DNA from: Euprymna scolopes
Lineage: Eukaryota
Length of the DNA: 64,000 nt
NCBI GenBank assembly: GCA_053919585.1
Contig: CM132803.1
Strand: one strand, 5' to 3'
In this document: positions 4,150-58,480 of the stretch, piece by piece
Layout of the letters: each line of letters starts with the position of its first letter
Position numbering within the stretch: position 1 is the first letter of the stretch
The notes under the pieces: model-generated
The model's input: the letters and a program-made list of their open reading frames with translations, nothing else
Told to the model about the DNA's origin: nothing
Database searches by the model: none
Program-made: the position numbers and the translations under genes

Positions 4150-6573
4150 ATGAGTTATAAATATACAGTAATGATGATGCTACACATAACTTTTATTGTT
4201 CTGTCTGCTTTACAAGGTTGTTTATGTACAGACCTTACCTACATTATTGAAGAAGGAAAAAGTCCAAATACATATTTAGGAAATATTGCAGTTGATTCAA
4301 ATATCATGGAAAATATTGATTCTAAAGACAATAAATTGATTTCATTCAGTTTATTGCAAGGAAGTATTGCAGGCAGTACTCAGTTATTCCGTGTTTCAAA
4401 GAATACAGGAAAACTGTACACTGCTCAAACATTGGATGCTGAATCACTTTGTACTTATAATGTAGAATGTTTTCAAATGGTTGATATTGCTGTAAAGAAA
4501 GCAGCAACTTTTATGAAATTAATTGAAATCAGAGTTATTATTAAAGATGTAAATGACCATCAACCTGAGTTCCCAGATAAACAAGTCAACATAAAATTTT
4601 CAGAAGAATCTACACAAGGGTCAAAACGTTTAATTCCAAATGCATTTGATCGAGATGTTGGAACTATTAATTCCCAGATTACTTATCATTTAAAAAATAA
4701 AGAAAATGAACCTTTTACTTTATTTATTTCAAAAAGTGTTGATGGAACATCACAATTAGCGATAAATCTAGAGAAAAAGCTTGATAGAGAAATTAAAATT
4801 TTTTATAAGATTGAAGTAATTGCAAAAGATGGAGGTTCTCCCCCAAAAGAAAGTACTCTTTACGTTCATATAACTGTAACTGATGTGAATGATAATTCTC
4901 CAGTGTTTTCTGAAAATTCTTATAATATTTCAATCAAGAATAAACCTGATGCTGCTTTGCCTCTGACTAGCTTATCAGCAAAGGATTTAGACTCTGGAGA
5001 AAATGGCAAAATCTCATACAGTTTCAGTTCAAAAACATCAGACGTTTCTAAAACTCATTTTGATTTAAACTCAGAAACTGGAGAAATTTTTCTAGTGAAG
5101 AAATTTACAACTGGGCAAAAACTGAAATATAAACTTTATGTTAAAGCTTCTGATGGAGGCAATCCTCCATTAAGTTCTCTGGCCATGATTCAAGTGAATG
5201 TGATTAATGAACAGAACAATGCGCCAACTATAAATATCAATTTTGCCTCAACATCTGGTGACAAATTTATGAAAATTTCAGAAGATATTAAGGTTGGAAG
5301 TTTTATTGCATATGTGAAAGTTACAGATCCAGATCTTGGACAAAATGGAGATGTTACTTGTACTCTTGATCACAATAAGTTTCAACTCCAAAGTCTGGAT
5401 ACAAAGAAATATCAAGTAATTGTAAAGAAACCAGTGGACAGAGAGAGTGAAGATCACCATGACATTAGGATCAGTTGTGAGGATAAAGGAAATCCTCCTC
5501 TTGAAAGTGAAAGCAGATTTTCAGTCCAAGTGATGGATGTGAATGATGAACAGCCACAATTTTCTAAACAATTATTTAAATTCTTCATTGATGAAAACCA
5601 GAGATCGAAAATTCCTATTGGCACAATCAATGCCACAGATCCAGACTTGGGACTTGGAGGTAAACTGTCTTTTTCTTTAGTGAGCACCAATAAACAATTT
5701 GTACCATTTCGAATCACTGAAAATGGATTAATCTCTTCAATTATGTCTTTAGACCATGAGTTTCAAGATACTTATAATTTTGAAGTGTTTGTAAAAGACA
5801 AAGGAAGTCCATCATTGAATAACACAGTGAATGTGATTGTTAAGGTGAGAGATGAAAATGATAATGCTCCATATTTCACATTTCCCAGTGTTAATCCTTA
5901 TAATATGGATGTAACATATTATCCGCATCATACAAAGAACATCAGCCAGATAAAGGCATCAGACAGTGACAGTCAAGAGAATGCATTTCTAAAATATGAA
6001 ATAATCAGAGGCAATAGCAAACAGATATTCAGCATCAACCAGTACACTGGTTTGTTATGTTCAACTCATGTCCTAAGCCAACAAGATGCTGGCTCATATG
6101 AGCTGGAGTTTCTAGTAAAGGACAGTGGTAGCCCAGTTCTATCAGCCAGAACTACTGTATATTTAACACTGACCGTAAGCAACAGGACATCAGAAATGTT
6201 AAATGCTGTTAACATCAAAAAAGATAATAAGATCCACCTGACTTCAGCAATTATCATTGTGTCTGTAGCAGTGACAATAGCTGTGATCATTACAGCTTCA
6301 ATCTCAGTGTGTATCCTTCGCTGTTGCAATCCTCGAAGTGTTCCAGTAGCAGAGGGTGGATATGTGAGTAGTGGTCAGAGACATTTGATAAGTCCTCCTT
6401 ACCCAGCCAATCCTTGGTCTAATGTTGCTCTTCCTACAAGTGATGCAGTTGATATGAGAAGAAGCAGTCAACCACCAACACCCAGAATGCAAACCCATCC
6501 TTACTCAAGTGCTCAACAAATGCTGTCATCTCAAGCACCAAAACTACAGCCAACTATGGATTCAGTATCACAG
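4150..6573 (+). CDS. Protocadherin g1 exon 2 (signal peptide, EC1-EC6, TM, proximal cytoplasmic tail)
   Basis: Acceptor ttcag ends 4105; first ATG 4150. Cadherin motifs DxNDxxP, LDRE, AxDxG; EC1 C-X5-C; TM AIIIVSVAVTIAVIITASISVCIL. Donor CAG|GTAATA after 6573 (phase 0). Confidence 0.93.
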
Positions 6574-6694
6574 GTAATATATTGGAATTGATTTAATTTG
6601 ATGTTATAAGTGTTTTCTAATATCAATGTTTTTATACATAAAAACCTATTATGTTTAGAATTTTTAGAAATGAGGACTAATAATTTGTAATATT

Positions 6695-7090: not shown

Positions 7091-7123
7091 ACTTAATTGT
7101 GAAAAGTACACCCAAATAGCAAT

Positions 7124-7127
<4 letters not shown>

Positions 7128-7193
<66 letters not shown>
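7128..7193. repeat. (TA)n microsatellite
   Basis: Uninterrupted AT dinucleotide run. Confidence 0.95.
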
Positions 7194-7196
<3 letters not shown>

Positions 7197-8062: not shown

Positions 8063-8225
8063 ATGTATGTTCAGGATGTAGCATTACCGTCTAGTAGTGA
8101 TAGAAACAAGAAAAGAACAACCAGAATGCAAGATTATTCCAGCAGAAGTTCAATAAAGTCTTCTCATAATGATGATAGACAAGGTTTAAGTGATGCAGAA
8201 TCATTACAAACTGAGAATGTGTCTG
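8063..8225 (+). CDS. Protocadherin g1 exon 3 (cytoplasmic)
   Basis: ttag|ATGTATGTTCAGGAT (MYVQDVALP...) to G|GTAAGT; 163 nt, phase 0 to 1; homologous exon in all paralogs. Confidence 0.9.
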
Positions 8226-8243
8226 GTAAGTGATAAGAAAAAT

Positions 8244-10873: not shown

Positions 10874-11157
10874 AGATATACCCATCACAATATTGTAATC
10901 CGCCACCATCAAAAAACGACCAGACCACAGAGATGAGATCCTTGGGACAAGTTGTCAGTTACCCTAGTGATACTACAATAGTGGCAAGAGGTTTTTATAC
11001 ACCTTATATGAATGAAAATAGCCCACTAACTGATGGAAAATCATATTTAGGTGCTGATATTAGCAGCCCTGTTGGTAGGCATTCACAATCGAGGACTGTG
11101 TCTGCTAGTGATAGTCAATCTTCTGTTAATAGACCCCTGCCACCTGTACCACAGTAA
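10874..11157 (+). CDS. Protocadherin g1 terminal coding exon
   Basis: tttag|AG ATA TAC CCA; EIYPSQYCNPPP...YPSDTTIVARGFYTPYMNE...NRPLPPVPQ-TAA. The spliced product is in frame, 956 aa. Confidence 0.9.
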
Positions 11158-12606: not shown

Positions 12607-12766
12607 GCAGCCATTACACACAAAGCACACAAAGTAGGACTGCTGGTTACCCCCTCATACAGACCATACTCTTGGATGAGACAAAATAAAAGCAATTGGA
12701 AAAATTAATATTTTTTGTGATGAAATCAGCATTTTACCATAAATCCTACTAGAATTTATTTCTAAG
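12607..12766 (+). promoter_or_regulatory. g2 conserved promoter/5' element and putative non-coding exon 1
   Basis: GCAGCCATT(12607)-N19-TAGGAC(12635); donor AAG|GTAAGT after 12766. Confidence 0.7.
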
Positions 12767-13748: not shown

Positions 13749-16160
13749 ATGTTGCTATTAGTAAACACATTATTGCCAACATACATTCTACTATTAACTC
13801 TACATGGATCTGTATGCATTGATCTTACTTACACAACTGAAGAAGGTAAAAGTTCAAATACTTACTTGGGAAATATTGCAGTTGATTCAAATATCATGGA
13901 AAATATTGACTCCAGTGATTACAGGTCTATTACATTCAGTTTATTACAAGAAGGTGTTGGCAGTACTCCATTATTCCGTGTCTCTAAGAATACAGGAAAA
14001 CTATACACTGCACAAACACTGGATGCTGAATCACTTTGTACATATAATGTAGAATGTTTTCAAATGGTTGATGTTGCTGTGAAAAAGGCATCCACATTCA
14101 TTAAATTATTAGAAATCAAAGTTATCATTAAAGATGTAAATGACCATCAACCTGAGTTCCCAGATAAGCAAATTAATATTCAATTTGATGAAGATGATGG
14201 AAGAGGGGTGAAGAGGTTAATACCTCATGCTGTAGATAGAGATATTGGAATTTTGAATGCTCAAATTACCTATGAGTTGAAAAAGAAAAAAACAGAACCA
14301 TTTACATTATTTGTTTCAAAAAGTGTTGATGGAACATCTCAATTAGCTTTGAATTTGGAGGAAAAACTTGATAGAGAAATCAAAAGTTTATATCAAATTG
14401 AAGTAATTGCAAAAGATGGTGGCAATCCTTCAAAACAAGCGAGGTTAAATGTTCAAATCACTGTAATTGATGTGAATGATAATTTCCCAGTTTTTTCTGA
14501 AAATGTTTATAATGTTTCAATTAAAAACAAACCAGATGCTGTTTTGCCTATTACTACTCTATCTGCAAAAGATTTAGATTCTGGCAAAAATGGTCAAATA
14601 TTATATCATTTCAGTTCAAAAACATCAGATATTGCTAAAACTCATTTTGATTTAAAATCAGAAACTGGAGAAATTTTTCTAGTGAAAAAATTTACAACTG
14701 GACAAAAATTGAAATATAAACTTTATGTTAAAGCTTCTGATGGAGGCAATCCTCCATTAAGCTCTCTAGTAATGGTTCAAGTAAATGTGATCAATGAACA
14801 GAACAATGCGCCAACTATAAATATCAATTTTGCCTCAACATCTGGTGACAAATTTATGAAAATTTCAGAAGATATTAAGGTTGGAAGTTTTATTGCATAT
14901 GTGAAAGTTACAGATCCAGATCTTGGACAAAATGGAGATGTTACTTGTACTCTTGATCATAATAAGTTTCAACTCCAAAGTCTGGATACAAAGAAATATC
15001 AAGTAATTGTAAAGAAACCAGTGGACCGAGAGAGTGAAGATCACCATGACATTAGGATCAGTTGTGAGGATAAAGGAAATCCTCCTCTTGAAAGTGAAAG
15101 CAGATTTTCAGTCCAAGTGATGGATGTGAATGATGAACAGCCACAATTTTCTAAACAATTATTTAAATTCTTCATTGATGAAAACCAGAGATCGAAAATT
15201 CCTATTGGCACAATCAATGCCACAGATCCAGACTTGGGACTTGGAGGTAAACTGTCTTTTTCTTTAGTGAGCACCAATAAACAATTTGTACCATTTCGAA
15301 TCACTGAAAATGGATTAATCTCTTCAATTATGTCTTTAGACCATGAGTTTCAAGATACTTATAATTTTGAAGTGTTTGTAAAAGACAAAGGAAGTCCATC
15401 ATTGAATAACACAGTGAATGTGATTGTTAAGGTGAGAGATGAAAATGATAATGCTCCATATTTCACATTTCCCAGTGTTAATCCTTATAATATGGATGTA
15501 ACATATTACCCGCATCATACAAAGAACATCAGCCAGATAAAGGCATCAGACAGTGACAGTCAAGAGAATGCATTTCTAAAATATGAAATAATCAGAGGCA
15601 ATAGCAAACAGATATTCAGCATCAACCAGTACACTGGTTTGTTATGTTCAACTCATGTCCTAAGCCAACAAGATGCTGGCTCATATGAGCTGGAGTTTCT
15701 AGTGAAGGACAGTGGTAGCCCAGTTCTATCAGCCAGAACTACTGTATATTTGACACTGACCGTAAGCAACAAGACATCAGAAATGTTAAATGCTGTTAAC
15801 ATCAAAAAAGATAACAAGATCCACCTGACTTCAGCAATTATCATTGTGTCTGTAGCAGTGACAATAGCTGTGATCATTACAGCTTCAATCTCAGTGTGTA
15901 TCCTTCGCTGTTGCAATCCTCGAAGTGTTCCAGTAGCAGAAGGCGGATATGTGAGTAGTGGTCAGAGACATTTGATAAGTCCTCCTTACCCAGCCAATCC
16001 TTGGTCTAATGTTGCTCTTCCTACAAGTGATGCAGTTGATATAAGAAGAAGCAATCAACCACCAACACCCAGAATGCAAACCCATCCTTACTCAAGTGCT
16101 CAACAAATGCTGTCATCTCCAGCAAGAAAACCAGATTCAGCTCCAGACACCCTTTCACAG
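13749..16160 (+). CDS. Protocadherin g2 exon 2 (SP, EC1-6, TM, proximal tail)
   Basis: Acceptor ends 13694; ATG 13749; six cadherin repeats; donor CAG|GTAATG after 16160. Confidence 0.93.
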
Positions 16161-16578: not shown

Positions 16579-16735
16579 ATGTATGCTCAAGACATTGCAC
16601 TACCACCCAATTGTAGTAGAACTCATGGGAAGACAAATAGATTACAAAATTATTCTAGTTCTCGTAAGTCTCCTCAACATGAAAATAGACAAGATTTGAA
16701 TGAAAGAAATACAAGACAAACTGAAGATATTGCAA
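16579..16735 (+). CDS. Protocadherin g2 exon 3
   Basis: ttcag|ATGTATGCTCAAGAC (MYAQDIALP) to A|GTAAGT; 157 nt. Confidence 0.88.
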
Positions 16736-18849
16736 GTAAGTCAGAAGAATTGCATACTTTAACAAATACATTTCTTGATCAATAAACTATTATTTTGGAT
16801 TAAGCCTTGTAAACAGGCTAAATTTTTATCATATACATTTTAATGTTGGAGATGATTTTTAAAACAAATTCTATTTATATGTGAATATTATTGAAAATTT
16901 TTTAAAAATATGTTGGGAACAATTATACTTATATATATTTATATACAATATTGAGAAGTATATAATTATATTATTGTATAATTAATTGTATTAGTTTCCA
17001 ATTGTATTTACTATAAAGTTATCTCAAATAAGGTTTTCATTTGATTTCAAAGCCTTGTTCTAGTTATATGCATATTTGTGATGTTATTTCCCCATTTGAA
17101 ATTAAACCATTACATTAGTAAGTATATAAAATATATTTGAATGGATGAGATTCATTGAAAATTATTTTCTGTTTCAAAGCTGTATACTTGTCCATTATTA
17201 CATTGCAATATTGCATAATTATTTTGTTTATTTAAATGCACAGTTCATATGTTAGAAAATGTATTGACACATTTTTGAGGAAAAGACAGTTCCTTCAATA
17301 TATACATCATATTAATGAAATTGAAATTCACATTTTAGTGATTAAATTTTTTAAAGATAATATTTTTAAAACCGGATTGAAATAATATACATTTTTTTTA
17401 AATTTTACTGATTTAATGAATTTATGTATATATAAAACTGTCATATAATACCTAAATAAGGAGAATATAATGGTCCTTTTTTTCCTATAAAATGTACAAA
17501 AACTAATAACAACTAATTTGACTTGTAAGTTTAACTCTGTGGTTGTTAAATTACTCTGTTCATTTAGTATCTTTGGTTTGGTTAACAATCTTTTCTATCT
17601 TGAAGATTATTTTCTCTGTTAATACCTTAATACTTGCAAATAGTATTATACATAATGGAGCATTATAATATGTTAGTCACTTTCTTGCTTAGCAAATAAT
17701 GAACAACTAATAATGAAGATTATCAAGATAATATTTTCCTATTTCTTTTTATGTAAATATATATTTGCATATACTTATAAATATATTTTACACACACACA
17801 CACACACATGTATATATATAATAATAAATACTAATAAATTTTGCTTATCTGAGTACTTTATCGCAGTTTCAAAGTTTAGCTATTTTTAAGAAGTTTTTCA
17901 ATATATTTATGAATTATATTTATACATTTGAATAAAAATTCAAAAGTTTTTTTTTGTTTTGTTTTTTTCAGAAGTCAGATGTTGGATTAATTTGAATTTA
18001 TGTATAACAAGAGTGTTAGTGAATTGCAGTTAAAAAATGTTTTTTATCTCCCTTTATTTATCTTTTTCATCATAAAATATATCTTTAGATTTTGAATGTT
18101 ATACTTTTTTTTCCCCCTTATGGTTGGAATTACACTGATGTAAACATTTATCTATATGCTATCGGCCAAACGATCATATTTCAAAAATATATGATTTAAT
18201 GAATGCACAGAAAATTTACAAAACACAAAAGATCAATTACAAATTCTTTTTTTCTATATATTACTAGTATACTGATTAATAACAAGCTTTCATTTAGAAT
18301 TATATAATGGGGCGAGGTAGATAGTTGGATTATGTAGATATGTTAAAGCATTGAAATTTTAGTTGAAATAGAAGGAACTAGAAAATAAACGGTTCTTTCG
18401 TACAACAGGAACATGTGACAAAATGAATGCTCTCCCTTGGTCCAGGAACCAACATCTTATACTACTGATCCACTATCACCTTGCAAACTGTTTTTTTTTA
18501 TGTGCGTACATTTTTTCAACTGGACAAAATGTTTTGAAGTGTTAACCCGAAAAAATATATTAACATAAAACAGTTTGCAAGATTATAAGGGACGAAATTG
18601 TTACCATTATTATTAGTGATAGTTTTATTTAAAAAAATATCCATCACTTAATTAGTGTAGCAAAATGAAAGCTTTCTCACCTATTACTTAGTTAAAAGTA
18701 ACTAATGAGAGTTCAATTTTGCTCATTAAGCGATGCCATTTTTCATATTAAAATGATCAAGCATCGGAAACTCTGAAACTCAGACATATCAACAATATAG
18801 ACCCCAAATAGGAAATTCTAGAGAACAGAAATAACAATAATTGAAGTAA

Positions 18850-22975: not shown

Positions 22976-23265
22976 ATAATTACTCATCGCAGTATTGTAA
23001 TGCTTCTTCTTCACCAAGTGACCAACAGCAGATCACAGAGATGAGATCCTTAGGACAGACGGTCAGCTACCCAAGTGATACCACCATAGTAGCCAGGGGA
23101 TTTTATACACCCTATATGAATGAGAACAGCCCTCTTACAGATAGAAAACCTTACTCAGGATGTGACTCAAATAGTTCCTCTGGTAGACATTCACAACCAA
23201 GAAACGTGTCTGCAAGTGATAGTCAGTCATCTATCAATAGACCATTACCCCCTGTACCTATCTAA
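22976..23265 (+). CDS. Protocadherin g2 terminal coding exon
   Basis: ttcag|AT AAT TAC; NNYSSQYCNASS...YPSDTTIVARGFYTPYMNE...NRPLPPVPI-TAA; spliced product 952 aa. Confidence 0.9.
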
Positions 23266-24058: not shown

Positions 24059-24208
24059 GCAGCCATTACTCAGGCAACACACAACGTAGGACTACTAGCT
24101 TATGTGGAACACAAAGAAGAATTTAAAAAAATACCACAATATAGTTATTACTATGAATTCAATATTTTACCAACATGCAAGTTAATGCAAACAGAAATAA
24201 GAACAAAG
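24059..24208 (+). promoter_or_regulatory. g3 conserved promoter/5' element and putative non-coding exon 1
   Basis: GCAGCCATT(24059)-N19-TAGGAC(24087); donor AAAG|GTAAGT after 24208. Confidence 0.7.
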
Positions 24209-24956: not shown

Positions 24957-27353
24957 ATGTTTACAAGAATTTATTTGATTCTCTTTGTCATCCACATTTG
25001 TTTATGTGCGGATCTCATTTATTATGTGGAAGAAGGGAAAAGTCCAGGTACTTACCTGGGAGATGTTGCTACTGATTCGCTTGTGTTGAAGGATATATCA
25101 CCTCAAAATGCTCACCAAATTAGTTTTAGTCTTTTGCGAAAAGGTGCCACTGGCAGTTCGCCTTTATTCCGAATCTCTGAGAAATCTGGCAAACTATACA
25201 CTGCCCAAACATTAGATGCTGAATCACTTTGCCTCTTCAATAAGGAATGCTTTCAAATGGTTGATGTAGCAGTGAGAAAAGGAACAGCTGTTTTCAAATT
25301 ATTAGAAATTAAAGTAATCATTAAAGATATCAATGATCACCAGCCTGAGTTTCCAGAGAAAAAAGTCAGTATAACATTTTCAGAGGAATTTGCTAAAGGT
25401 GCAAGGCAGTCAATTCCAAATGCAATTGATAAAGATGTGGGAATTATTAATTCAAAAATAACATACGAGCTTATGAAGCAAAGAGAGCAACCTTTCTCTT
25501 TATTTGTATCTAAAAGTGTTGATGGAACATCAAAACTGAGCATAATTTTGGAAAAAAAACTTGATAGAGAAATAAAAGACTCTTACATGCTTCAAGTGAT
25601 TGCAAAAGATGGAGGTTCTCCACCTAAAGAAAGTGTTTTAAATGTTGACGTTATTGTCACAGATGTTAATGACAATATTCCTGTTTTCTCAAAGAAAGTT
25701 TACAATGTTTCAATCCAACATAATCATGACGAAGTACAACCTGTAACTGTATTGTCTGCTACAGATTTGGATTCTGGAAAGAATGGAAAAATTTTATACT
25801 ATACCAGTGTGAAAACAAATGATATAACAAGAAATGCTTTTAAAATAAATGAACAAACAGGTGAAATATTTCTAAACAAAAAAATGATTATAAGAAAAGA
25901 TTTGGTTTATGAGTTGTATGTTGAAGCTTCAGATGGGGGGAAACCTCCCTTGAGTGCATTGGCAAAGGTTTTAATAAATGTGATAAATGAACAAAATAAT
26001 GCTCCAATTATTGATGTAAACTTTATCTCAACATCAAAGGAAAATACAGTTGATGTTTCTGAAAACATAAAAGTTGGTAGTTTCATTGCTTATGTGAAAG
26101 TAAGTGATGAGGATGCTGGTCAGAATGGAGAGGTGAACTGTGAAATAAAACATGATAAATTTCAATTGCAAAACATGGGAACCAAGAAATACCAAGTGAT
26201 AGTGAAAACTCTTTTAGACAGGGAAACTGAAGATCATCACAGTATAATTATCAAATGTCAAGACAAAGGATCTCCTCCTCTTCAAAGCAAAAGGACATTT
26301 TCTGTACATGTGATTGATGTTAATGATGTAGAACCAGTGTTTTCTAAACAATTATTTAAATTCTTCATTGATGAAAACCAGAGATCGAAAATTTCTATTG
26401 GCACAATCAATGCCACAGATCCAGACTTGGGACTTGGAGGTAAACTGTCTTTTTCTTTAGTGAGCACCAATAAACAATTTGTACCATTTCGAATCACTGA
26501 AAATGGATTAATCTCTTCAATTATGTCTTTAGACCATGAGTTTCAAGATACTTATAATTTTGAAGTGTTTGTAAAAGACAAAGGAAGTCCATCATTGAAT
26601 AACACAGTGAATGTGATTGTTAAGGTGAGAGATGAAAATGATAATGCTCCATATTTCACATTTCCCAGTGTTAATCCTTATAATATGGATGTAACATATT
26701 ACCCGCATCATACAAAGAACATCAGCCAGATAAAGGCATCAGACAGTGACAGTCAAGAGAATGCATTTCTAAAATATGAAATAATCAGAGGCAATAGCAA
26801 ACAGATATTCAGCATCAACCAGTACACTGGTTTGTTATGTTCAACTCATGTCCTAAGCCAACAAGATGCTGGCTCATATGAGCTGGAGTTTCTAGTGAAG
26901 GACAGTGGTAGCCCAGTTCTATCAGCCAGAACTACTGTATATTTGACACTGACCGTAAGCAACAAGACATCAGAAATGTTAAATGCTGTTAACATCAAAA
27001 AAGATAACAAGATCCACCTGACTTCAGCAATTATCATTGTGTCTGTAGCAGTGACAATAGCTGTGATCATTACAGCTTCAATCTCAGTGTGTATTCTTCG
27101 CTGTTGCAATCCTCGAAGTGTTCCAGTAGCAGAAGGCGGATATGTGAGTAGTGGTCAGAGACATTTAATAAGTCCTCCTTACCCAGCCAATCCTTGGTCT
27201 AATGTTGCTCTTCCTACAAGTGATGCAGTTGATATGAGAAGAAGCAGTCAACCACCAACACCCAGAATGCAAACTCATCCTTATGCAAGCACTCAGCAAA
27301 TTTTATCTTCTCAAACAAGAAAACCTGAACCAGCTCCTGACTCTGTTTCACAG
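24957..27353 (+). CDS. Protocadherin g3 exon 2
   Basis: Acceptor ends 24912; ATG 24957; six cadherin repeats and TM; donor CAG|GTAAAT after 27353. Confidence 0.93.
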
Positions 27354-27554: not shown

Positions 27555-27714
27555 ATGTATATTCAAGATATAGCATTGCCATCTGGTAGTGACAGAAGTC
27601 AGAAAAAAGTTGCCAAAATGCAAAACTATTCCAGTAGAAATTCTATAAAATCTCACAATGATAACAGACAAGGTTGGAATGATAAAAACACAAGATCAAT
27701 TGAAGGCCTTACGG
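27555..27714 (+). CDS. Protocadherin g3 exon 3
   Basis: ttag|ATGTATATTCAAGAT (MYIQDIALP) to G|GTAAGT; 160 nt. Confidence 0.9.
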
Positions 27715-34804: not shown

Positions 34805-35094
34805 ATATATACCCTTCTCAATATTGTAATCCTCCTCCTTCACAAATTGATCAACGTCGTATAACAGAGACAAGACCCTTAGGACAGACTGTCAGCTACC
34901 CCAGTGATACAACAATAGTAGCAAGAGGTTTCTACACACCCTACATGAATGAAAACAGTCCTCATGCAGATGCAAAGTCTGACTCTGGTGGTGAAAACAA
35001 TAGTCTATCTAGTAGACAGTTACAATCAAGAAATATATCTGCGAGCGGTAGCCAGTCTTCAATCAACAGACCATTACCACCTGTACCATCCTAA
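34805..35094 (+). CDS. Protocadherin g3 terminal coding exon
   Basis: ttcag|AT ATA TAC CCT; DIYPSQYCNPPP...YPSDTTIVARGFYTPYMNE...NRPLPPVPS-TAA; spliced product 948 aa. Confidence 0.9.
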
Positions 35095-37815: not shown

Positions 37816-40212
37816 ATGATAGTGAAAATATATATTTTTATGATTATTTTCTCTTTATCTGAGTGTACAGACCTCACATATTATGTTGAGGAAGGCATAA
37901 GTCCTGGTACCTATTTGGGAGATATAGGTCTTGATTCGGAAGTGATGAAAGACACAACCCCAGAAGAAAAGAACAAAATTACTTTTAGTCTACTGCAACA
38001 AGGTCTCATTGGTACTTCTCCAATGTTTAGAATTTCAGAAAAATCAGGAAAACTCTACACAGCTCAAACTCTAGATGCTGAGGCTATTTGTACTTTTAAA
38101 AAAGAATGTTTTAAAATGGTTGATATTGCTGTTCAAAAAGCAACAACTGTTTTTAAATTGTTAGAAGTGAAAGTGATTATACAAGACATCAATGATCATC
38201 AACCTGAATTTCCAGATAAACAAGTTAATATTGAGTTTGAAGAAAGCATTGTTCCTGGAACAAAGATATTAATTCCAAATGCAATAGATAGAGATGTTGG
38301 TATTCTCAATTCTCAAATAACATATCATTTAAAAAGAAACAAAGATGAACCTTTTTCGTTATCAGTTGCAAAAAACGTAGATGGTACATCAAGATTGGAT
38401 ATAAATTTAGAAAGTCAACTTGACAGAGAAGTAAAGGACTCCTACAAGATTCAAGTGATTGCAAAAGATGGTGGATCTCCCCCAAAACAAAGTACATTAG
38501 ATGTTCTTATTACAGTGACAGATGTCAATGATAATGCTCCAATCTTTACTCAAAATGTTTATAATGTTACTGTTAACAACATGGTTGATACTAATAAAGC
38601 TGTGGCAACATTATCGGCAAAAGATTTGGATTCAGGTAAAAATGGAATGATTTCATATTATTTTAGTAGTAAAACTTCAGATATTGGCAAAAACATTTTT
38701 TCAATTAATGAAGATTCTGGAGAAATATTTTTCAATAAAAAGATAGAATTCATGCAGCAATCAACATATGAACTATATGTTAAAGCCGAAGATAAAGGTG
38801 ACCCTCCACTCAGTTCTATTGTAATGGTTGTAGTAAATTTAATTAATCAGCAGAATAATCCTCCAAGTATTAAAGTAAATTTTGTTTCAACATCAAAGGA
38901 CAACACAGTTGATATTTCTGAAGACATAAAAGTTGGTAGTTTCATTGCATACGTGAAAGTAATTGATACGGATATTGGCAATGATGGAGAGGTTAGTTGT
39001 TATCTTTCACATAAAAAATTTCAGCTTCGCAATATGGGCACACAGAAATATCAAGTTATAGTAAAAGATTATTTAGACAGAGAGAGGAATGACCATCATG
39101 ATATTATCATCGATTGTAAAGATAAAGGAAATCCTCCATTGAAAAGTAGAAGTAAATTTTCAGTCCATGTGATGGATGTGAATGATGAACAGCCACAATT
39201 TTCTAAACAATTATTTAAATTCTTCATTGATGAAAACCAGAGATCGAAAATTCCTATTGGCACAATCAATGCCACAGATCCAGACTTGGGACTTGGAGGT
39301 AAACTGTCTTTTTCTTTAGTGAGCACCAATAAACAATTTGTACCATTTCGAATCACTGAAAATGGATTAATCTCTTCAATTATGTCTTTAGACCATGAGT
39401 TTCAAGATACTTATAATTTTGAAGTGTTTGTAAAAGACAAAGGAAGTCCATCATTGAATAACACAGTGAATGTGATTGTTAAGGTGAGAGATGAAAATGA
39501 TAATGCTCCATATTTCACATTTCCCAGTGTTAATCCTTATAATATGGATGTAACATATTACCCGCATCATACAAAGAACATCAGCCAGATAAAGGCATCA
39601 GACAGTGACAGTCAAGAGAATGCATTTCTAAAATATGAAATAATCAGAGGCAATAGCAAACAGATATTCAGCATCAACCAGTACACTGGTTTGTTATGTT
39701 CAACTCATGTCCTAAGCCAACAAGATGCTGGCTCATATGAGCTGGAGTTTCTAGTGAAGGACAGTGGTAGCCCAGTTCTATCAGCCAGAACTACTGTATA
39801 TTTGACACTGACCGTAAGCAACAAGACATCAGAAATGTTAAATGCTGTTAACATCAAAAAAGATAACAAGATCCACCTGACTTCAGCAATTATCATTGTG
39901 TCTGTAGCAGTGACAATAGCTGTGATCATTACAGCTTCAATCTCAGTGTGTATCCTTCGCTGTTGCAATCCTCGAAGTGTTCCAGTAGCAGAAGGCGGAT
40001 ATGTGAGTAGTGGTCAGAGACATTTGATAAGTCCTCCTTATCCAGCAAATCCTTGGTCTAATGTTGCTCTTCCTACAAGTGATGCAGTTGATATGAGAAG
40101 AAGCAGTCAACCACCAACACCCAGAATGCAAACCCATCCTTACTCAAGTGCTCAACATATGTTACCATCTCAAGCACCAAAACCACAACCAGCACCAGAT
40201 TCTGTTTCACAG
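37816..40212 (+). CDS. Protocadherin g4 exon 2
   Basis: Acceptor ends 37759; ATG 37816; six cadherin repeats and TM; donor CAG|GTAAAT after 40212. Confidence 0.93.
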
Positions 40213-41162: not shown

Positions 41163-41198
41163 ATATATATATATATATATATATATGCAAATCAATAA

Positions 41199-41236
<38 letters not shown>

Positions 41237-44672: not shown

Positions 44673-44835
44673 ATGTATCTTCAAGATGTAGCTTTACCTG
44701 CTGGCAGGGACAGAAACAAGAAAAGAACTGAAAGGACCCAAGACTATTCAAGTGGAAAATCTATAAAATCTTCACAAAACCCAAATAGACTTGTTTGGAG
44801 TGAAGAAGAGACATTACAAACGGAAAATATAACTG
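44673..44835 (+). CDS. Protocadherin g4 exon 3
   Basis: ttag|ATGTATCTTCAAGAT (MYLQDVALP) to G|GTAAGC; 163 nt. Confidence 0.9.
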
Positions 44836-45189
44836 GTAAGCCAAAAAAAATTTAACTAAAAAATATGTTATTTCTAAACTGGTCTCTTAAATATTAATGA
44901 GAAAGAAATATATATATTTTAATATTTAGAATTCAATTGTAAAATGTATAATTTATATTTTAGTGTTACTTTTGATATTGAATAAGACAGAACATGACAT
45001 TTATAAGAAATAACATTATTTTGATTTACTGAACAATTTCTAAAACAAAGAATTATTCTAGTCTTTTAAAATATTCAGTTTTCTTCACACTAATTATATT
45101 ATGTGGGCATTTGTACACCTGACTATTATCTATATTTACATAAAAATCATGTTGTTTTTATTTTTTTAGTTTATTTTCTTATTTTTCAG

Positions 45190-45479
45190 ATTTGAGTACG
45201 TCCCAATATTGTAATCCGCCTCCATCGCAAAGTGACTTATCACAGACATCAGTGATGCGGCCTTTAGAACAAACCATCAATTATCCAAGTGATACTACAA
45301 TTGTAGCAAGGGGCTTCTATACATCTTACATGAATGAACATAATCTCCAAACAGATTCAAAGAATTACTCAGGTGTTGATAGTAGCAGTCTCCCTGAGCG
45401 ATATTCACAATCAAGAAATGTACCTGCAAGTGGTAGTCAGTCCTCAATTAACAGGCCATTGCCTCCCGTACCTCATTAA
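45190..45479 (+). CDS. Protocadherin g4 terminal coding exon
   Basis: ttcag|AT TTG AGT; DLSTSQYCNPPP...YPSDTTIVARGFYTSYMNE...NRPLPPVPH-TAA; spliced product 949 aa. Confidence 0.9.
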
Positions 45480-46291: not shown

Positions 46292-46433
46292 GCGGCCATT
46301 ACACAGGCATCAAACTACATAGGACATGTAGTTCCTCTGTAAAAGACAGGAAAATGGTGGATTATCTAAGTATTAAAAATAATACATCTATTAACATACC
46401 TTCTATTTGGTGTGAACAGATTTAAGAACAAAG
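46292..46433 (+). promoter_or_regulatory. g5 conserved promoter/5' element and putative non-coding exon 1
   Basis: GCGGCCATT(46292)-N19-TAGGAC(46320); donor AAAG|GTAAGT after 46433. Confidence 0.7.
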
Positions 46434-47138: not shown

Positions 47139-49544
47139 ATGCTGAAGCTGTTTCTGAAAACTTGTATTAACTTCTACATCTTACACTTTTGTGTGTGTAT
47201 GGATCTCGCTTACTATGTGGAAGAAGGGAAAAGTCCAGGTACTTACCTGGGAGATGTTGCTACTGACTCTCTTGTCTTGAAGGACATATCACCTCAAGAT
47301 GCTCATCAAATTAGTTTTGGTCTTTTGCAAAAAAGTGCAACTGGCAGTTCACCATTATTCCGAATCTCTGAGAAATCTGGCAAACTCTACACTGCCCAAA
47401 CATTAGATGCTGAATCACTTTGCCTTTTCAATAAAGAATGTTTTCAAATGGTTGATGTAGCAGTGAGGAAAGGAACCACTGTTTTCAAATTAATGGAAAT
47501 TAAAGTAGTTATTAAAGATATCAATGATCATCAGCCAGAATTCCTTGAAAAACAATCAACTCTTACGTTTAGTGAAGATGATCGAAAAGGGGCCAGAAGA
47601 TCAATTCCAAATGCAATTGACAAAGATGTTGGAATTATTCATTCTAAAATAACCTATGAGCTTAAAAGGCAAAGAGAGAAACCTTTTTCTTTGCTTGTAT
47701 CTAAAAGTGTTGATGGAACATCAAAATTGAGTATAATTTTAGAAAAACCTCTTGATAGAGAAGTAAAAGACTCTTACATGCTTCAAGTGATTGCAAAAGA
47801 TGGAGGTTCTCCACCTAAAGAAAGTGTTTTAAATGTTGACGTTATTGTCACAGATGTTAATGACAATATTCCTGTTTTCTCACAGAAAGTTTACAACATC
47901 TCAATCCAACACAATCATGAGGAAACGAAACCTGTTACTGTATTGTCTGCTACAGATTTGGATTCTGGAAAGAATGGAAAAATTTTATATCATACCAGTG
48001 TGAAAACAAATGAAATGACAAGAAATGCCTTTAAATTGAATGAAAAAACTGGAGAAATATTCCTTAAAAAGAAAATCACTTTGAGAAAAGATATAATGTA
48101 TGAATTATATGTTGAAGCATCGGATGAAGGTAGTCCACCATTAAGTTCATTATCAATGGTTTTAATAAATGTGATAAATGAACAAAATAATGCTCCAATT
48201 ATTGATGTAAATTTCTTCTCAACATCAAAGGAAAATACAGTTGATGTTTCTGAAAATATAAAAGTTGGTAGTTTCATTGCTTATGTGAAAGTAAGTGATG
48301 AGGATGCTGGTCAGAATGGAGAGGTGAACTGTGAAATAAAACATGATAAATTTCAATTGCAAAACATGGGAACCAAGAAATACCAAGTGATAGTGAAAAC
48401 TCTTTTAGACAGGGAAACTGAAGATCATCACAGTATAATTATCAAATGTCAAGACAAAGGATCTCCTCCTCTTCAAAGCAAAAGGACATTTTCTGTACAT
48501 GTGATTGATGTTAATGATGTAGAACCAGTGTTTTCTAAACAATTATTTAAATTCTTCATTGATGAAAACCAGAGATCGAAAATTCCTATTGGCACAATCA
48601 ATGCCACAGATCCAGACTTGGGACTTGGAGGTAAACTGTCTTTTTCTTTAGTGAGCACCAATAAACAATTTGTACCATTTCGAATCACTGAAAATGGATT
48701 AATCTCTTCAATTATGTCTTTAGACCATGAGTTTCAAGATACTTATAATTTTGAAGTGTTTGTAAAAGACAAAGGAAGTCCATCATTGAATAACACAGTG
48801 AATGTGATTGTTAAGGTGAGAGATGAAAATGATAATGCTCCATATTTCACATTTCCCAGTGTTAATCCTTATAATATGGATGTAACATATTACCCGCATC
48901 ATACAAAGAACATCAGCCAGATAAAGGCATCAGACAGTGACAGTCAAGAGAATGCATTTCTAAAATATGAAATAATCAGAGGCAATAGCAAACAGATATT
49001 CAGCATCAACCAGTACACTGGTTTGTTATGTTCAACTCATGTCCTAAGCCAACAAGATGCTGGCTCATATGAGCTGGAGTTTCTAGTGAAGGACAGTGGT
49101 AGCCCAGTTCTATCAGCCAGAACTACTGTATATTTGACACTGACCGTAAGCAACAAGACATCAGAAATGTTAAATGCTGTTAACATCAAAAAAGATAACA
49201 AGATCCACCTGACTTCAGCAATTATCATTGTGTCTGTAGCAGTGACAATAGCTGTGATAATTACAGCTTCAATCTCAGTGTGTATCCTTCGCTGTTGCAA
49301 TCCTCGAAGTGTTCCAGTAGCAGAAGGCGGATATGTGAGTAGTGGTCAGAGACATTTGATAAGTCCTCCTTACCCAGCCAATCCTTGGTCTAATGTTGCT
49401 CTTCCTACAAGTGATGCAGTTGATATGAGAAGAAGCAGTCAACCACCAACACCCAGAATGCAAACTCATCCTTACTCAAGCGCTCAGCAAATTTTATCTT
49501 CTCAAGCAAGAAAACCAGACCCAATTTCAGATTCTGTTTCACAG
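47139..49544 (+). CDS. Protocadherin g5 exon 2
   Basis: ATG 47139 (acceptor either directly before it or at ~47061); six cadherin repeats and TM; donor CAG|GTAAAT after 49544. Confidence 0.93.
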
Positions 49545-49735: not shown

Positions 49736-49892
49736 ATGTATATTCAAGATGTGGCATTGCCATCTGGTAGTGACAGGAATCAGAAAAAAGTTGGCAGAAT
49801 GCAAAACTATTCCAGTAGTAATTCGATAAAATCTCACAATGACAGACAAGGTTTTAATGATAGAAACACAAAACCAATTGAAGGCATGACAG
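49736..49892 (+). CDS. Protocadherin g5 exon 3
   Basis: ttag|ATGTATATTCAAGAT (MYIQDVALP) to G|GTGAGT; 157 nt. Confidence 0.9.
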
Positions 49893-49999
49893 GTGAGTCA
49901 TGAAAGAAAATCTGTTATTTTATATCATCTTTTGTCTATGTCCAAATACATAAAAGCCTTGGTTAGAATCAATTAAAAATATACTAACAAAGTGGTTTT

Positions 50000-52447: not shown

Positions 52448-52737
52448 ATATATACCCTTCTCAATATTGTAATCCTCCGCCTTCACAAATTGATCAATGC
52501 CGTACAACAGAGACAAGACCCTTAGGACAGACTGTCAGCTATCCTAGTGATACAACAATAGTAGCAAGAGGTTTCTACACATCCTACATGAATGAAAATA
52601 GTCCTCATGCAGATGCAAAGTCTGACTCTGGTGGTGAAAACAATAGTTTATCTAGTAGACAGTTACAATCAAGAAATATATCTACAAGTGGTAGCCAGTC
52701 TTCAATCAACAGACCACTACCACCCTTACCATCCTAA
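52448..52737 (+). CDS. Protocadherin g5 terminal coding exon
   Basis: ttcag|AT ATA TAC; DIYPSQYCNPPP...YPSDTTIVARGFYTSYMNE...NRPLPPLPS-TAA; spliced product 950 aa. Confidence 0.9.
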
Positions 52738-56080: not shown

Positions 56081-58480
56081 ATGATAATATTACAATCATA
56101 CATCCTTATGTGTATCTTGCCTCTGTTTAAGTGCATAGATCTCACATATTATGTTGAGGAAGGTATAAGTCCTGGAACTTACTTAGGAGATATAGGTATT
56201 GACTCAGAAGTGATGAAAGACACATCTCCAGATGAACAAAATAAAATTACTTTTAGCCTGTTACAACAAGGTGTCATTGGTACTTCTCCAATGTTTAGAA
56301 TTTCAGAAGAATCAGGAAAACTCTACACAGCTCAAACTCTAGATGCTGAGACTATTTGTACTTTTAAAAAAGAATGTTTTAAAATGGTTGATATTGCTGT
56401 TCAAAAAACAACAACTGTTTTTAAATTGTTAGAAGTGAAAGTGATTATACAAGACATCAATGATCATCAACCTGAATTTCCAGATAAAAAAGTTAATATT
56501 GAGTTTTCTGAAGGTGACCGAAAAGGAATGAGAAAAATTATCGCAAATGCAATAGACAGAGATGTTGGTGTTCTCAATTCTCAAATAACCTACCATTTAA
56601 AAAGAAACAAAGATGAACCTTTTTCGTTATCAGTTGCAAAAAACGTCGATGGTACATCAAGATTGGATATAAATTTAGAAAGCCAACTCGACAGAGAAAT
56701 AAAAGATTCCTACAAGATTCAAGTGATTGCAAAAGATGGTGGATCTCCAGCAAAACAAAGTACATTAGATGTTCTTATTACAGTGACAGACGTCAATGAT
56801 AATGCTCCAATCTTTACTCAAAATGTTTATAATGTTACTGTTAACAACATGGTTGATACTAATAAAGCTGTGGCAACATTATCGGCAAAAGATTTGGATT
56901 CAGGTAAAAATGGAATGATTTCATATTATTTTAGTAGTAAAACTTCAGATATTGGCAAAAACATTTTTACAATTAATGAAGATTCTGGAGAAATATTTTT
57001 CAATAAAAAGATAGAATTCATGCAGCAATCAACATATGAACTATATGTTAAAGCCGAAGATAAAGGTGACCCTCCACTCAGTTCTATTGTAATGGTTGTA
57101 GTAAATTTAATTAATCAGCAGAATAATCCTCCAAGTATTAAAGTAAATTTTGTTTCAACATCAAAGGACAACACAGTTGATATTTCTGAAGACATAAAAG
57201 TTGGTAGTTTCATTGCATACGTGAAAGTAATTGATACGGATATTGGCAATGATGGAGAGGTTAGTTGTTATCTTTCACATAAAAAATTTCAGCTTCGCAA
57301 TATGGGCACACAGAAATATCAAGTTATAGTAAAAGATTATTTAGACAGAGAGAGGAATGACCATCATGATATTATCATCGATTGTAAAGATAAAGGAAAT
57401 CCTCCATTGAAAAGTAGAAGTAAATTTTCAGTCCAAGTGATGGATGTGAATGATGAGCAGCCACAATTTTCTAAACAATTATTTAAATTCTTCATTGATG
57501 AAAACCAGAGATCAAAAATTCCTATTGGCACAATCAATGCCACAGATCCAGACTTGGGACTTGGAGGTAAACTGTCTTTTTCTTTAGTGAGCACCAATAA
57601 ACAATTTGTACCATTTCGAATCACTGAAAATGGATTAATCTCTTCAATTATGTCTTTAGACCATGAGTTTCAAGATACTTATAATTTTGAAGTGTTTGTA
57701 AAAGACAAAGGAAGTCCATCATTGAATAACACAGTGAATGTGATTGTTAAGGTGAGAGATGAAAATGATAATGCTCCATATTTCACATTTCCCAGTGTTA
57801 ATCCTTATAATATGGATGTAACATATTACCCACATCATACAAAGAACATCAGCCAGATAAAGGCATCAGACAGTGACAGTCAAGAGAATGCATTTCTAAA
57901 ATATGAAATAATCAGAGGCAATAGCAAACAGATATTCAGCATCAACCAGTACACTGGTTTGTTATGTTCAACTCATGTCCTAAGCCAACAAGATGCTGGC
58001 TCATATGAGCTGGAATTTCTAGTGAAGGACAGTGGTAGCCCAGTTCTATCAGCCAGAACTACTGTATATTTGACACTGACCGTAAGCAACAAGACATCAG
58101 AAATGTTAAATGCTGTTAACATAAAAAAAGATAACAAGATCCACCTGACTTCAGCAATTATCATTGTGTCTGTAGCAGTGACAATAGCTGTGATCATTAC
58201 AGCTTCAATCTCAGTGTGTATCCTTCGCTGTTGCAATCCTCGAAGTGTTCCAGTAGCAGAAGGTGGATATGTGAGTAGTGGTCAGAGACATTTGATAAGT
58301 CCTCCTTACCCAGCCAATCCTTGGTCTAATGTTGCTCTTCCTACAAGTGATGCAGTTGATATGAGAAGAAACAGTCAACCACCAACACCCAGAATGCAAA
58401 CTCATCCTTACTCAAGCAATCAACAAATGCTGTCGTCTCAAGCACCAAAACCACAGCTACCTGCAGACTCCGTTTCACAG
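56081..58480 (+). CDS. Protocadherin g6 exon 2
   Basis: Acceptor ends 56037; ATG 56081; six cadherin repeats and TM; donor CAG|GTATAT after 58480. Confidence 0.93.

What the first reader, a model, noticed from the sequence alone, without database searches (positions are those of the whole stretch)
5560..58410. A 'constant region' without a constant exon: a 944-bp EC5-EC6-TM-juxtamembrane tract homogenised across all six genes
Seen: tracts 5560-6503, 15147-16090, 26340-27283, 39199-40142, 48531-49474 and 57467-58410 are all 944 bp and nearly identical, including synonymous sites. I counted about 9 differences between g1 and g2 by eye and fewer among g2-g5. EC1-EC4 of the same exon fall into three clearly diverged types, and the last ~70 bp of the exon, the introns and exons 3-4 are diverged. 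The 5' edge sits at the EC4/EC5 linker (P-x-F|SKQLF). Known: in vertebrate clustered protocadherins EC1-4 set homophilic trans specificity, EC5-6 mediate promiscuous cis dimers, and alpha/gamma isoforms share spliced constant exons; gene conversion among vertebrate Pcdh paralogs is also known. Inference: this invertebrate array reaches a variable-plus-constant design by domain-restricted ongoing gene conversion. That would keep all isoforms cis-compatible while the recognition domains diversify, a convergent neuronal barcode system.
Basis: partly seen in the sequence, partly recalled or inferred. Interest (0 to 1): 0.88.

Follow-up and report, generated by a model that had tools for sequence, protein, structure and literature searches.

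The report
Gene-converted constant block in squid-type protocadherins
Six neighbouring cell-adhesion (protocadherin) genes of a squid- or cuttlefish-like animal keep the 944 bases for their membrane-near part almost letter-identical by copying it between genes, while their outer recognition domains stay old and different; fish protocadherin clusters are known to do the same, so this is an independent new example, not a new mechanism.

Summary
The six 944-bp tracts differ pairwise by only 4-12 bases and have no indels. Synonymous divergence in the tract is 0.01-0.05. Between types it is 1.2-1.85 in EC1-EC4, and each gene's own exons 3 and 4 are also saturated. Introns and upstream DNA cannot be aligned.

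Trees are incongruent. EC1-4 splits the genes into three types, each sister to a different gene of a collinear array in another assembly. The tract puts all six in one clade. Across other arrays of that assembly, EC5-TM is 94-100% identical within most arrays but only 63-68% between most. This rules out family-wide constraint.

Best explanation: recent interlocus gene conversion, bounded at the EC4/EC5 linker and 70 nt before the splice donor. Nested within-type tracts cover EC3/EC4.

Each gene has its own downstream exons, so there is no spliced constant exon.

The same pattern is published for fugu and zebrafish clustered protocadherins: over 99% identity, an EC4/EC5 boundary and raised GC3. 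Gene conversion has been suggested in general terms for cephalopods.

The cis-compatibility and barcode reading is untested.

This scan had already found the same thing on neighbouring arrays of this genome. Verdict: a new member of a known kind.

The parts
4096..6573 (+). g1 large exon (signal peptide, EC1-EC6, TM, proximal tail); type C
   Evidence: The ORF is open to a CAG|GTA donor at 6573. Pfam Cadherin was scanned on g2 and g4 only; g1 is assigned by alignment to them.
5560..6503 (+). g1 homogenised tract (EC5, EC6, TM, about 60 aa juxtamembrane). It is the most diverged copy, with 6 private sites.
13749..16160 (+). g2 large exon; type C
15147..16090 (+). g2 homogenised tract. Residues 1-204 align in register with EC5-EC6 of solved protocadherins (5v5x, 6e6b, 6vg1).
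24957..27353 (+). g3 large exon; type A
26340..27283 (+). g3 homogenised tract
37816..40212 (+). g4 large exon; type B
39199..40142 (+). g4 homogenised tract
47139..49544 (+). g5 large exon; type A
48531..49474 (+). g5 homogenised tract
56081..58480 (+). g6 large exon; type B
57467..58410 (+). g6 homogenised tract
5182..5559 (+). Nested within-type tract g1/g2, from the end of EC3 through EC4. The partner is g2 14769-15146. There are 7 mismatches in 378 nt.
25957..26339 (+). Nested within-type tract g3/g5, from the end of EC3 through EC4. The partner is g5 48148-48530. There are 7 mismatches in 383 nt.
38272..39198 (+). Nested within-type tract g4/g6, from EC2 through EC4. The partner is g6 56540-57466. 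There are 18 mismatches in 927 nt.
8075..8230 (+). g1 exon 3 (DVALPSSSDR...). Equivalents lie at about 16591-16740, 27567-27719, 44685-44840, 49748-49897 and 60787-60943. Exon ends are approximate.
   Evidence: Blocks are conserved between genes, have AG/GT signals and keep an open frame. Between types they are 49-75% identical at the nucleotide level.
10885..11157 (+). g1 terminal exon (SQYCN...YPSDTTIVARGFYT...RPLPPVP, then stop). Equivalents: 22987-23265, 34816-35094, 45201-45479, 52459-52737 and 61617-61895. The exon at 876-1160 belongs to a gene upstream of the window.
   Evidence: Between types pS is 0.51-0.73, although the protein motifs are conserved.

Best explanation
The window holds six same-strand, complete protocadherin genes of a decapodiform-type cephalopod. 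Each has one large exon (signal peptide, EC1-EC6, TM, proximal tail) plus its own two small downstream exons.

The duplications are old. Synonymous sites are saturated between the three EC1-4 types, and introns cannot be aligned. After those duplications, interlocus (ectopic, non-reciprocal) gene conversion copied one version of the EC5-EC6-TM-juxtamembrane segment into all six genes. By the scan's earlier notes it also reached neighbouring genes of the array. Since then each copy has collected a few private mutations, mostly G/C to A/T.

Between types the converted segment ends sharply at the EC4/EC5 linker and 70 nt before the splice donor. Within a type, where more homology remains, conversion runs further 5', to the EC3/EC4 junction or into EC2.

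Shown here: the homogenisation, its edges, its youth relative to the genes, its specificity to the array, and the absence of a shared exon.

Inferred, not shown: the edges are held by two forces. One is the homology cliff, because heteroduplex cannot extend into about 35% diverged DNA. The other is selection against homogenising the recognition domains. Also inferred by analogy with vertebrate clustered protocadherins: a uniform membrane-proximal module keeps isoforms of one array interchangeable in cis assembly, surface delivery and signalling.
For: - Tract identity: 4-12 differences in 944 nt and no indels.
- Tract dS is 0.010-0.050, against 1.19-1.85 in EC1-4 between types.
- By domain, pS is 0.00-0.12 in EC5, EC6, TM and the juxtamembrane segment. 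It is 0.52-0.76 in EC1-EC4 between types and 0.18-0.68 in the last 23 codons of the exon.
- Internal control: the terminal exon keeps strongly conserved peptide motifs, yet pS is 0.51-0.73 between types.
- Non-coding flanks are unalignable between types and about 74-82% identical for the youngest pairs.
- Tree incongruence. In EC1-4, (g1,g2)+P0001, (g3,g5)+P0011 and (g4,g6)+P0012 all have SH-aLRT of 96 or more. In the tract the six window genes form one clade at 99.
- AU tests reject the alternative groupings: p=5e-192, 8e-4 and 7e-6.
- The comparison array is collinear by type: P0121-P0001-P0011-P0012-P0017 against g1-g5.
- Within four other arrays, EC5-TM aa identity is 94-100% against 58-96% in EC1-EC4 (a fifth is 72-84% against 52-66%). 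Between most arrays EC5-JM is only 63-68%, against 58-62% for EC1-4.
- GC3 is 0.30-0.31 in the tract and 0.19-0.245 in EC1-4. Fisher p<0.05 in 5 of 6 genes.
- 17 of the 19 private tract variants are G/C to A/T.
- The same signature was interpreted as regional gene conversion in fugu (PMC1852091).
Against: - No reads are available, so homogenisation by assembly or polishing cannot be formally excluded.
- The cross-genome comparison is at protein level only. It could be a paralogous block of a related or even the same species rather than the orthologue.
- The star-like pattern means continuing conversion is not demonstrated.
- The GC3 excess is modest and not significant in g3.
- The functional rationale (cis-compatibility) has no direct support here.
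Confidence: 0.9

Rival explanations
1. Assembly or polishing artefact. The 944-bp repeats were collapsed or cross-polished to a consensus, so the near-identity is not in the animal's genome.
For: Near-identical repeats of about 1 kb in a tandem array are a known hazard for short-read polishing. No read data could be examined.
Against: - The copies are not identical. Each carries 1-6 private substitutions, and the edges are sharp to the base and lie in unique flanks.
- The edges coincide with a domain linker, not with arbitrary positions.
- An independent assembly (ENA ERZ21867824) shows the same design in several arrays at protein level, with EC5-TM at 94-100% and EC1-4 at 58-89%.
- 944 bp is far shorter than typical long reads.
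Confidence: 0.03
2. Constraint rather than copying. EC5-TM is under extreme purifying selection that includes synonymous sites (for example RNA structure for A-to-I editing, or an embedded DNA element), so old paralogs simply never diverged there.
For: Cephalopod coding sequences are known to carry constraint around RNA-editing sites (general knowledge, not tested here). EC5-TM is slightly more conserved than EC1-4 between arrays, 63-68% against 58-62%.
Against: - The same segment differs by 7-10% at amino-acid level from its closest relatives in the collinear array, and by about 35% from other arrays. It is therefore free to change.
- Tract trees group by array and reject grouping by type.
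- The terminal exon's conserved motifs show that protein constraint leaves synonymous sites saturated.
- No Rfam family lies in the tract.
Confidence: 0.02
3. Unequal crossing-over or recent duplication. The genes, or gene tails, are young copies made by crossovers inside the tract, and EC1-4 then diverged very fast under diversifying selection.
For: Types alternate (A,B,A,B for g3-g6). The downstream exons and flanks of g3/g5 and g4/g6 are similar (pS 0.11-0.36). Together these point to duplication of a two-gene unit. Crossovers in the block probably do contribute to the birth of new copies.
Against: - A crossover leaves one flank as young as the tract. Here both flanks of every tract are far older than the tract: the last 70 nt of the exon, the introns, exons 3-4 and EC1-4, with pS of 0.11 or more even in the youngest pairs and saturated between types.
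- Synonymous saturation in EC1-4 cannot be produced by selection on protein.
Confidence: 0.05

Closest known systems
Regional gene conversion in teleost clustered protocadherins (fugu Pcdh2 subclusters, Yu et al. 2007, PMC1852091; zebrafish, Noonan et al. 2004b as cited in PMC4978886 and PMC1852091)
   Same: - Tandem same-strand genes or variable exons, each encoding six EC repeats, a TM and a short tail in one large exon.
- The 3' part is over 99% identical at nucleotide level among neighbours whose 5' parts are diverged.
- A discrete boundary lies in EC4 or EC5.
- Synonymous sites are homogenised.
- GC3 is raised in the converted part.
- Each converted block is specific to one subcluster and differs between subclusters.
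   Different: - The cephalopod expansion is an independent, lineage-specific one (PMC9068888).
- The units are complete genes with their own downstream exons, not variable exons spliced to constant exons.
- The converted block stops 70 nt before the exon end here.
- The GC3 rise is small (0.30 against about 0.21) in a very AT-rich genome, whereas in fugu GC3 exceeds 50%.
Mammalian and Xenopus clustered Pcdh alpha/beta/gamma: low dS in EC5/EC6, high dS in EC2/EC3 (Etlioglu et al. 2016, PMC4978886)
   Same: The same polarity: membrane-proximal domains are homogenised and N-terminal recognition domains are spared.
   Different: Conversion is much weaker in mammals and frog. Alpha and gamma isoforms share spliced constant exons, which this array lacks.
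Cephalopod protocadherin arrays as described by Albertin et al. 2022 (PMC9068888) and Styfhals et al. 2019 (PMC6339937)
   Same: Multi-exon, same-orientation sub-arrays of closely related PCDH genes made by full gene duplication, without shared final exons. [quoted passage not shown]
   Different: In the texts I could search, those papers invoke conversion only in general terms, to explain species-specific clades. I found no domain-level description of an EC5-TM block, its edges, or dS by domain. Albertin 2015 and Noonan 2004b themselves were not readable here.
Vertebrate cPcdh cis-dimer module (EC5-EC6/EC6 asymmetric interface; Goodman 2017 and Brasch 2019 as summarised in PMC7811963)
   Same: The homogenised tract begins exactly where the vertebrate trans (EC1-4) and cis (EC5-6) division falls. 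It aligns in register with EC5-EC6 of gamma-B7 and gamma-B4 (5v5x, 6e6b).
   Different: Delta-protocadherins (6vg1, 6vg4, 6pgw) match about as well. Nothing shows that cephalopod protocadherins dimerise in cis. Other arrays of this genome and of the ENA assembly place the boundary inside EC3/EC4 (notes s1-244837, s1-292399).

Membership tests
Protocadherin (cadherin superfamily, six-EC type) | Six tandem extracellular cadherin repeats with a protocadherin-type N-terminal repeat, encoded by one large exon | tested here: met
   Pfam Cadherin scores E=1e-79 with 6 stretches in g2. Cadherin_2 scores 32.5 bits against a cut-off of 23. Five inter-repeat linkers (D-x-N-D-x-x-P-x-F type) can be read in the sequence. 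One uninterrupted ORF of about 800 codons covers them.
Protocadherin (cadherin superfamily, six-EC type) | A single transmembrane helix after EC6 and a cytoplasmic tail | tested here: met
   A run of about 27 hydrophobic residues (LTSAIIIVSVAVTIAVIITASISVCIL), followed by RCC, is read directly from the translation. No dedicated TM predictor was run.
Regional gene conversion / concerted evolution of tandem Pcdh paralogs | Near-identity that includes synonymous sites in one part of the exon, with saturated synonymous divergence in the rest | tested here: met
   dS is 0.01-0.05 in the tract and 1.2-1.85 outside it.
Regional gene conversion / concerted evolution of tandem Pcdh paralogs | Both flanks of the identical segment are older than the segment (a patch, not a crossover product) | tested here: met
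   The 5' flank (EC1-4 and upstream DNA) and the 3' flank (70-nt exon tail, introns, exons 3-4) are all diverged.
Regional gene conversion / concerted evolution of tandem Pcdh paralogs | Phylogenetic incongruence: the converted part groups by array or species, the unconverted part by orthologue or type | tested here: met
   Trees and AU tests. This is at protein level only, and the species of the comparison contig is unknown.
Regional gene conversion / concerted evolution of tandem Pcdh paralogs | Raised GC3 in the converted part (GC-biased conversion) | tested here: met
   GC3 is 0.30-0.31 in the tract and 0.19-0.245 outside it. Fisher p is 0.0002-0.07 across the six genes. The effect is modest.
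Vertebrate-style clustered Pcdh locus (variable exons plus shared constant exons) | All isoforms are spliced to one shared set of constant exons | tested here: not met
   Every gene is followed by its own exon 3 and its own terminal exon with a stop codon. These are diverged between types: pS 0.5-0.73 in the terminal exon and 0.53 or more in exon 3, where the g4/g6 copies were only partly captured. This agrees with PMC9068888. No transcript data for this species were available.
Vertebrate-style clustered Pcdh locus (variable exons plus shared constant exons) | A conserved promoter element ahead of each isoform, with stochastic promoter choice | tested here: inconclusive
   A conserved element of about 21-34 nt lies 0.85-2 kb upstream of g1, g2, g3, g5 and the next gene: 4 matches against 0.01 expected, plus a BLAST hit at 2071. 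It was not found ahead of g4 or g6 at 3 or fewer mismatches. Promoter activity and choice cannot be tested here.
cis-dimerising EC5-EC6 module of clustered Pcdhs | EC6 and EC5-EC6 surfaces that form promiscuous cis dimers | not testable with these tools
   Only in-register homology to EC5-EC6 of gamma-B7 and gamma-B4 is shown, and delta-Pcdhs match equally well.

The most novel reading that the evidence does not exclude
Each cephalopod protocadherin sub-array carries its own gene-converted EC5-EC6-TM 'constant' module, about 35% different from the modules of other arrays. These modules would define cis-compatibility groups: isoforms of one array co-assemble freely with one another but not with those of other arrays. 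The animal would then have several parallel variable-plus-constant recognition systems, built without constant exons and convergent with the vertebrate alpha/beta/gamma clusters.
Probability: 0.2. Interest if true: 0.8.

Novelty: new member of a known kind. Interest (0 to 1): 0.45.

Why it matters
Vertebrates and coleoid cephalopods expanded their protocadherins independently. Both lineages now show the same evolutionary regime: diverse N-terminal domains, and a membrane-proximal EC5-EC6-TM part that is repeatedly overwritten between neighbours. That parallel is circumstantial evidence that the modular logic worked out for vertebrate clustered protocadherins may also apply in cephalopod brains. 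In that logic EC1-4 give trans specificity and EC5-6 give shared cis assembly.

The finding has practical consequences:
- Trees of cephalopod PCDHs should be built from EC1-EC3 only.
- Counts of 'recent duplicates' based on whole-gene identity are inflated by conversion.
- The array-specific constant blocks give a defined construct design for cell-aggregation and cis-dimer assays: swap the blocks between arrays.

Tried and rejected
1. A GENECONV-style permutation of the longest concordant runs among polymorphic sites. It was uninformative for the shared tract, because all six copies are homogenised and few polymorphic sites remain. It detected only the within-type tracts (g1/g2, g3/g5, g4/g6 and g2/g4, each 0 of 2000). 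I replaced it with per-domain dS, polymorphism density and tree incongruence.
2. Fetching DNA of the closest array (ENA ERZ21867824, contig of 237,501 bp). It failed because the sample file is too large, so there is no cross-genome dS. Cluster look-up gave no name or accession, and the accession appears in no paper.
3. Reading Noonan 2004b (PMC353213) and Albertin 2015 (PMC4795812). Neither is held, so their content is cited only as reported by other papers.
4. An Rfam scan and a tandem-repeat scan of the window for an embedded RNA or repeat that could explain DNA-level constraint. There were no Rfam matches, and only AT microsatellites and one 33-nt repeat, all in introns.
5. The idea that the tract stands in for the vertebrate constant exons. 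I rejected it in favour of the closer analogy with the converted 3' part of teleost variable exons.
6. Structure prediction and fold search were not run. Sequence already places the tract in register on solved EC5-EC6 structures, and a monomer model would not test cis dimerisation.
Full report
**What is there.** The window (28.5% G+C, no N) carries six long ORFs on the + strand, 8.9-12.9 kb apart. Their products are 800-830 aa. The two scanned against Pfam (g2 and g4) show five or six Cadherin stretches and a protocadherin-type first repeat. The translations show five inter-repeat linkers, one hydrophobic TM stretch and a proximal tail. The best named relatives are protocadherins of the cuttlefish Acanthosepion pharaonis, at about 60% identity. 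The nearest relatives overall (69-84%) are unnamed proteins from one ENA assembly, ERZ21867824. No octopod protein is among the 120 best. I therefore take the source to be a decapodiform-type cephalopod; this is an inference.

**Gene structure.** Each ORF runs to a CAG|GTA donor in phase 0, at 6573, 16160, 27353, 40212, 49544 and 58480.
- Every gene is followed by its own small exon 3 (D-V/I-A-L-P...) with AG and GT signals.
- Every gene also has its own terminal exon (SQYCN...YPSDTTIVARGFYT...RPLPPVP, then stop).
- A seventh terminal exon at 876-1160 belongs to a gene upstream of the window.

There is thus no shared constant exon. This agrees with Albertin et al. 2022, who state that cephalopod PCDH diversity arises by full gene duplication and not by splicing to shared final exons (PMC9068888).

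**Check of the observation.** The six 944-bp tracts are in register without indels and differ by 4-12 bases.
- A 100-nt sliding comparison shows 97-100% identity for all 15 pairs across the tract.
- In EC1-EC4 between types, identity is 55-80%.
- In introns and upstream DNA, identity is 35-60%, which is the level of unalignable sequence.
- Only 21 of the 944 tract sites vary, against 717 of 1450 aligned coding sites outside it.

Nei-Gojobori estimates and proportions of synonymous differences:

| Region | Measure | Value |
|---|---|---|
| Tract | dS | 0.010-0.050 |
| EC1-4, between types | dS | 1.19-1.85 |
| EC5, EC6, TM, juxtamembrane | pS | 0.00-0.12 |
| EC1-EC4, between types | pS | 0.52-0.76 |
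| Last 23 codons of the exon | pS | 0.18-0.68 |

The edge is base-sharp for g3/g5, with seven differences in the ten bases before the tract. For g1, g2, g4 and g6 it lies 42 nt further upstream. Tract residues 1-204 align in register with EC5-EC6 of solved protocadherins: 5v5x gamma-B7 EC3-6, 6e6b gamma-B4 EC1-6, and the delta-type 6vg1 and 6vg4.

**Why gene conversion.** Three alternatives were tested.

1. Constraint.
   - The terminal exon is an internal control. Its peptide motifs are strongly conserved (pN 0.13-0.19), yet pS is 0.51-0.73 between types. Protein-level selection therefore does not hold synonymous sites in these genes.
   - The tract itself is free to change. It is 99-100% identical in protein among the six genes, but only 89-93% identical to most genes of the closest array (82-85% to one subgroup of that array).
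   - In four other arrays of the ENA assembly, EC5-TM is 94-100% identical within an array, while EC1-EC4 are 58-96%. A fifth array (c255849) is much less homogenised, at 72-84% in EC5-TM.
   - Between most arrays, EC5-to-juxtamembrane is 63-68% identical, hardly more than EC1-4 at 58-62%. Three pairs among c250921, c255849 and c161988 reach 80-91%, so those arrays share a related block. Otherwise the block is constant within an array, not within the family. Yu et al. reported the same for fugu subclusters (PMC1852091).

2. Recent duplication or unequal crossing-over.
   - Both flanks of every tract are older than the tract. Even the youngest pairs (g3/g5, g4/g6) have pS of 0.11-0.36 in EC1-EC2 and in exons 3-4. 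Their non-coding DNA is about 74-82% identical.
   - For g1/g2, the terminal exons are saturated (pS 0.71), although their EC4 and tract are nearly identical.
   - A crossover product would share one young flank. A patch with two old flanks is the signature of non-reciprocal conversion.

3. Phylogeny.
   - On EC1-4 the window's genes form three pairs. Each pair is sister to a different gene of the ENA contig: P0001, P0011 and P0012, with SH-aLRT of 96-100.
   - On the tract the six form one clade (99).
   - AU tests reject one clade for EC1-4 (p=5e-192). For the tract they reject type-wise grouping (p=8e-4 and 7e-6).
   - The ENA contig is collinear by type: P0121, P0001, P0011, P0012, P0017 against g1-g5.
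   - Caveats: the test is at protein level, the contig's species is unknown, and it could be a paralogous block. Either way, the tract was homogenised within the window's array after the two arrays separated.

**Further anatomy.**
- Conversion is hierarchical.
  - Within types the near-identity continues upstream: 7 mismatches in 378 nt for g1/g2, 7 in 383 nt for g3/g5, and 18 in 927 nt for g4/g6.
  - The first two of these nested tracts start within 5 alignment positions of each other, just before the degenerate EC3/EC4 linker.
  - 'Domain-restricted' is therefore true only between types. The pattern fits homology-dependent tract extension, with or without selection.
- GC3 is higher in the tract (0.30-0.31) than in EC1-4 (0.19-0.245). 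The effect is modest. This is the published signature of GC-biased conversion in fish Pcdh clusters.
- Of the 21 variable tract sites, 19 are private to one copy. That exceeds the 53% expected for a neutral genealogy of six copies (p=3e-4).
- 17 of those 19 are G/C to A/T relative to the consensus (p=5e-6).
- I read this as one recent homogenising wave followed by AT-biased mutational decay. g1 (6 private sites) and g6 (5) have been untouched the longest.
- The data show 'recent' conversion, not 'ongoing' conversion.

**Artefact.** I cannot inspect reads. Against a collapse or polishing artefact:
- Every copy has private variants.
- The edges are base-sharp and coincide with a domain linker.
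- The segment is short relative to long reads.
- An independent assembly shows the same design in several arrays.

**Comparison with what is known.** The closest described system is regional gene conversion in teleost clustered protocadherins. In fugu, the 3' region of variable exons is over 99% identical among neighbouring paralogs. A discrete boundary lies in EC4 or EC5, GC3 is raised, and the blocks are subcluster-specific (PMC1852091). The papers read cite Noonan et al. 2004b for frequent gene conversion among zebrafish and human Pcdh paralogs, less often in EC2-EC3 than in EC4-EC6. In mouse and Xenopus, dS is lowest in EC5/EC6 (PMC4978886).

[quoted passage not shown] In the searchable literature I found no domain-level description. 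The window is therefore a new, convergent member of a known kind. The correct vertebrate analogue of the tract is the converted part of the variable exon, not the spliced constant exons.

**Function.** In vertebrates, EC1-4 make the specific trans contact, and EC5-EC6/EC6 make promiscuous cis dimers (summarised in PMC7811963). The between-type edge here falls exactly on that division, which is suggestive. However:
- Other arrays place the edge in EC3/EC4 (and earlier notes).
- Delta-protocadherins match the tract as well as gamma-B isoforms do.
- Nothing tests cis dimerisation or neuronal barcoding.

I give the cis-compatibility-group reading about 0.2.

**Earlier notes of this scan.** The same kind of block was already reported just beyond this window's end (924 bp; s1-288451). 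It was also reported 69 kb further on (956 bp; s1-259181, followed up) and 48 Mb away (1296 bp; s1-244837, followed up). The follow-ups reached the same verdict. I did not see that DNA. My conclusions rest on this window and on the ENA proteins.

Noticed in passing
window 2071-2112, 12610-12630, 24062-24082, 46295-46315, 62714-62734: A conserved element with core GCCATTACNCAGGCANCANAC lies 0.85-2 kb upstream of g1, g2, g3, g5 and the next gene beyond the window. There are 4 matches against 0.01 expected, plus a BLAST match for g1. It was not found ahead of g4 or g6 at 3 or fewer mismatches. It is a candidate per-gene promoter or 5' exon element, and the scan already lists it as a separate finding (s1-288450).
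   Followed up: partly
window 24957-58480 (g3-g6): The types alternate A,B,A,B. Similar downstream exons and flanks in g3/g5 and g4/g6 (pS 0.11-0.36; non-coding about 74-82%) indicate duplication of a two-gene unit that predates the tract homogenisation. The breakpoints could not be placed.
   Followed up: partly
window about 14790-14820 (g2 residues 348-357) and the equivalents in the other genes: The EC3/EC4 linker reads N-E-Q-N-N-A-P in place of the usual D-x-N-D-N-x-P calcium-binding motif in g1, g2, g3 and g5 (N-Q-Q-N-N-P-P in g4 and g6). Two independent within-type conversion tracts (g1/g2 and g3/g5) begin just upstream of it.
   Followed up: partly
window 6504-6573 and equivalents (last 23 codons of the large exon): A short, fast-changing cytoplasmic segment (pN 0.12-0.26) sits between the constant block and the splice donor. 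It has exactly the same length (70 nt) in all six genes. Why conversion stops short of the exon end in every copy is unexplained.
   Followed up: no
window 876-1160: A terminal exon (…YPSDTTIVARGFYT…RPLPPVPN, then stop) of a further protocadherin gene whose large exon lies upstream of the window. The array therefore continues on both sides.
   Followed up: no
ENA assembly ERZ21867824, contig of 237,501 bp (proteins P0001-P0017, P0121, P0122): A collinear array with tighter gene spacing (5-8.5 kb). Its EC5 is less homogenised (mean 84% aa) than its EC6-TM (96-100%). One subgroup (P0007, P0008, P0009, P0013) has its own block variant. So the extent of conversion differs between related arrays.
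   Followed up: partly
window 7127-7193 and 41163-41235: Long (AT)n microsatellites lie in the introns after g1 and g4. The Rfam scan found no RNA family anywhere in the window.
   Followed up: yes
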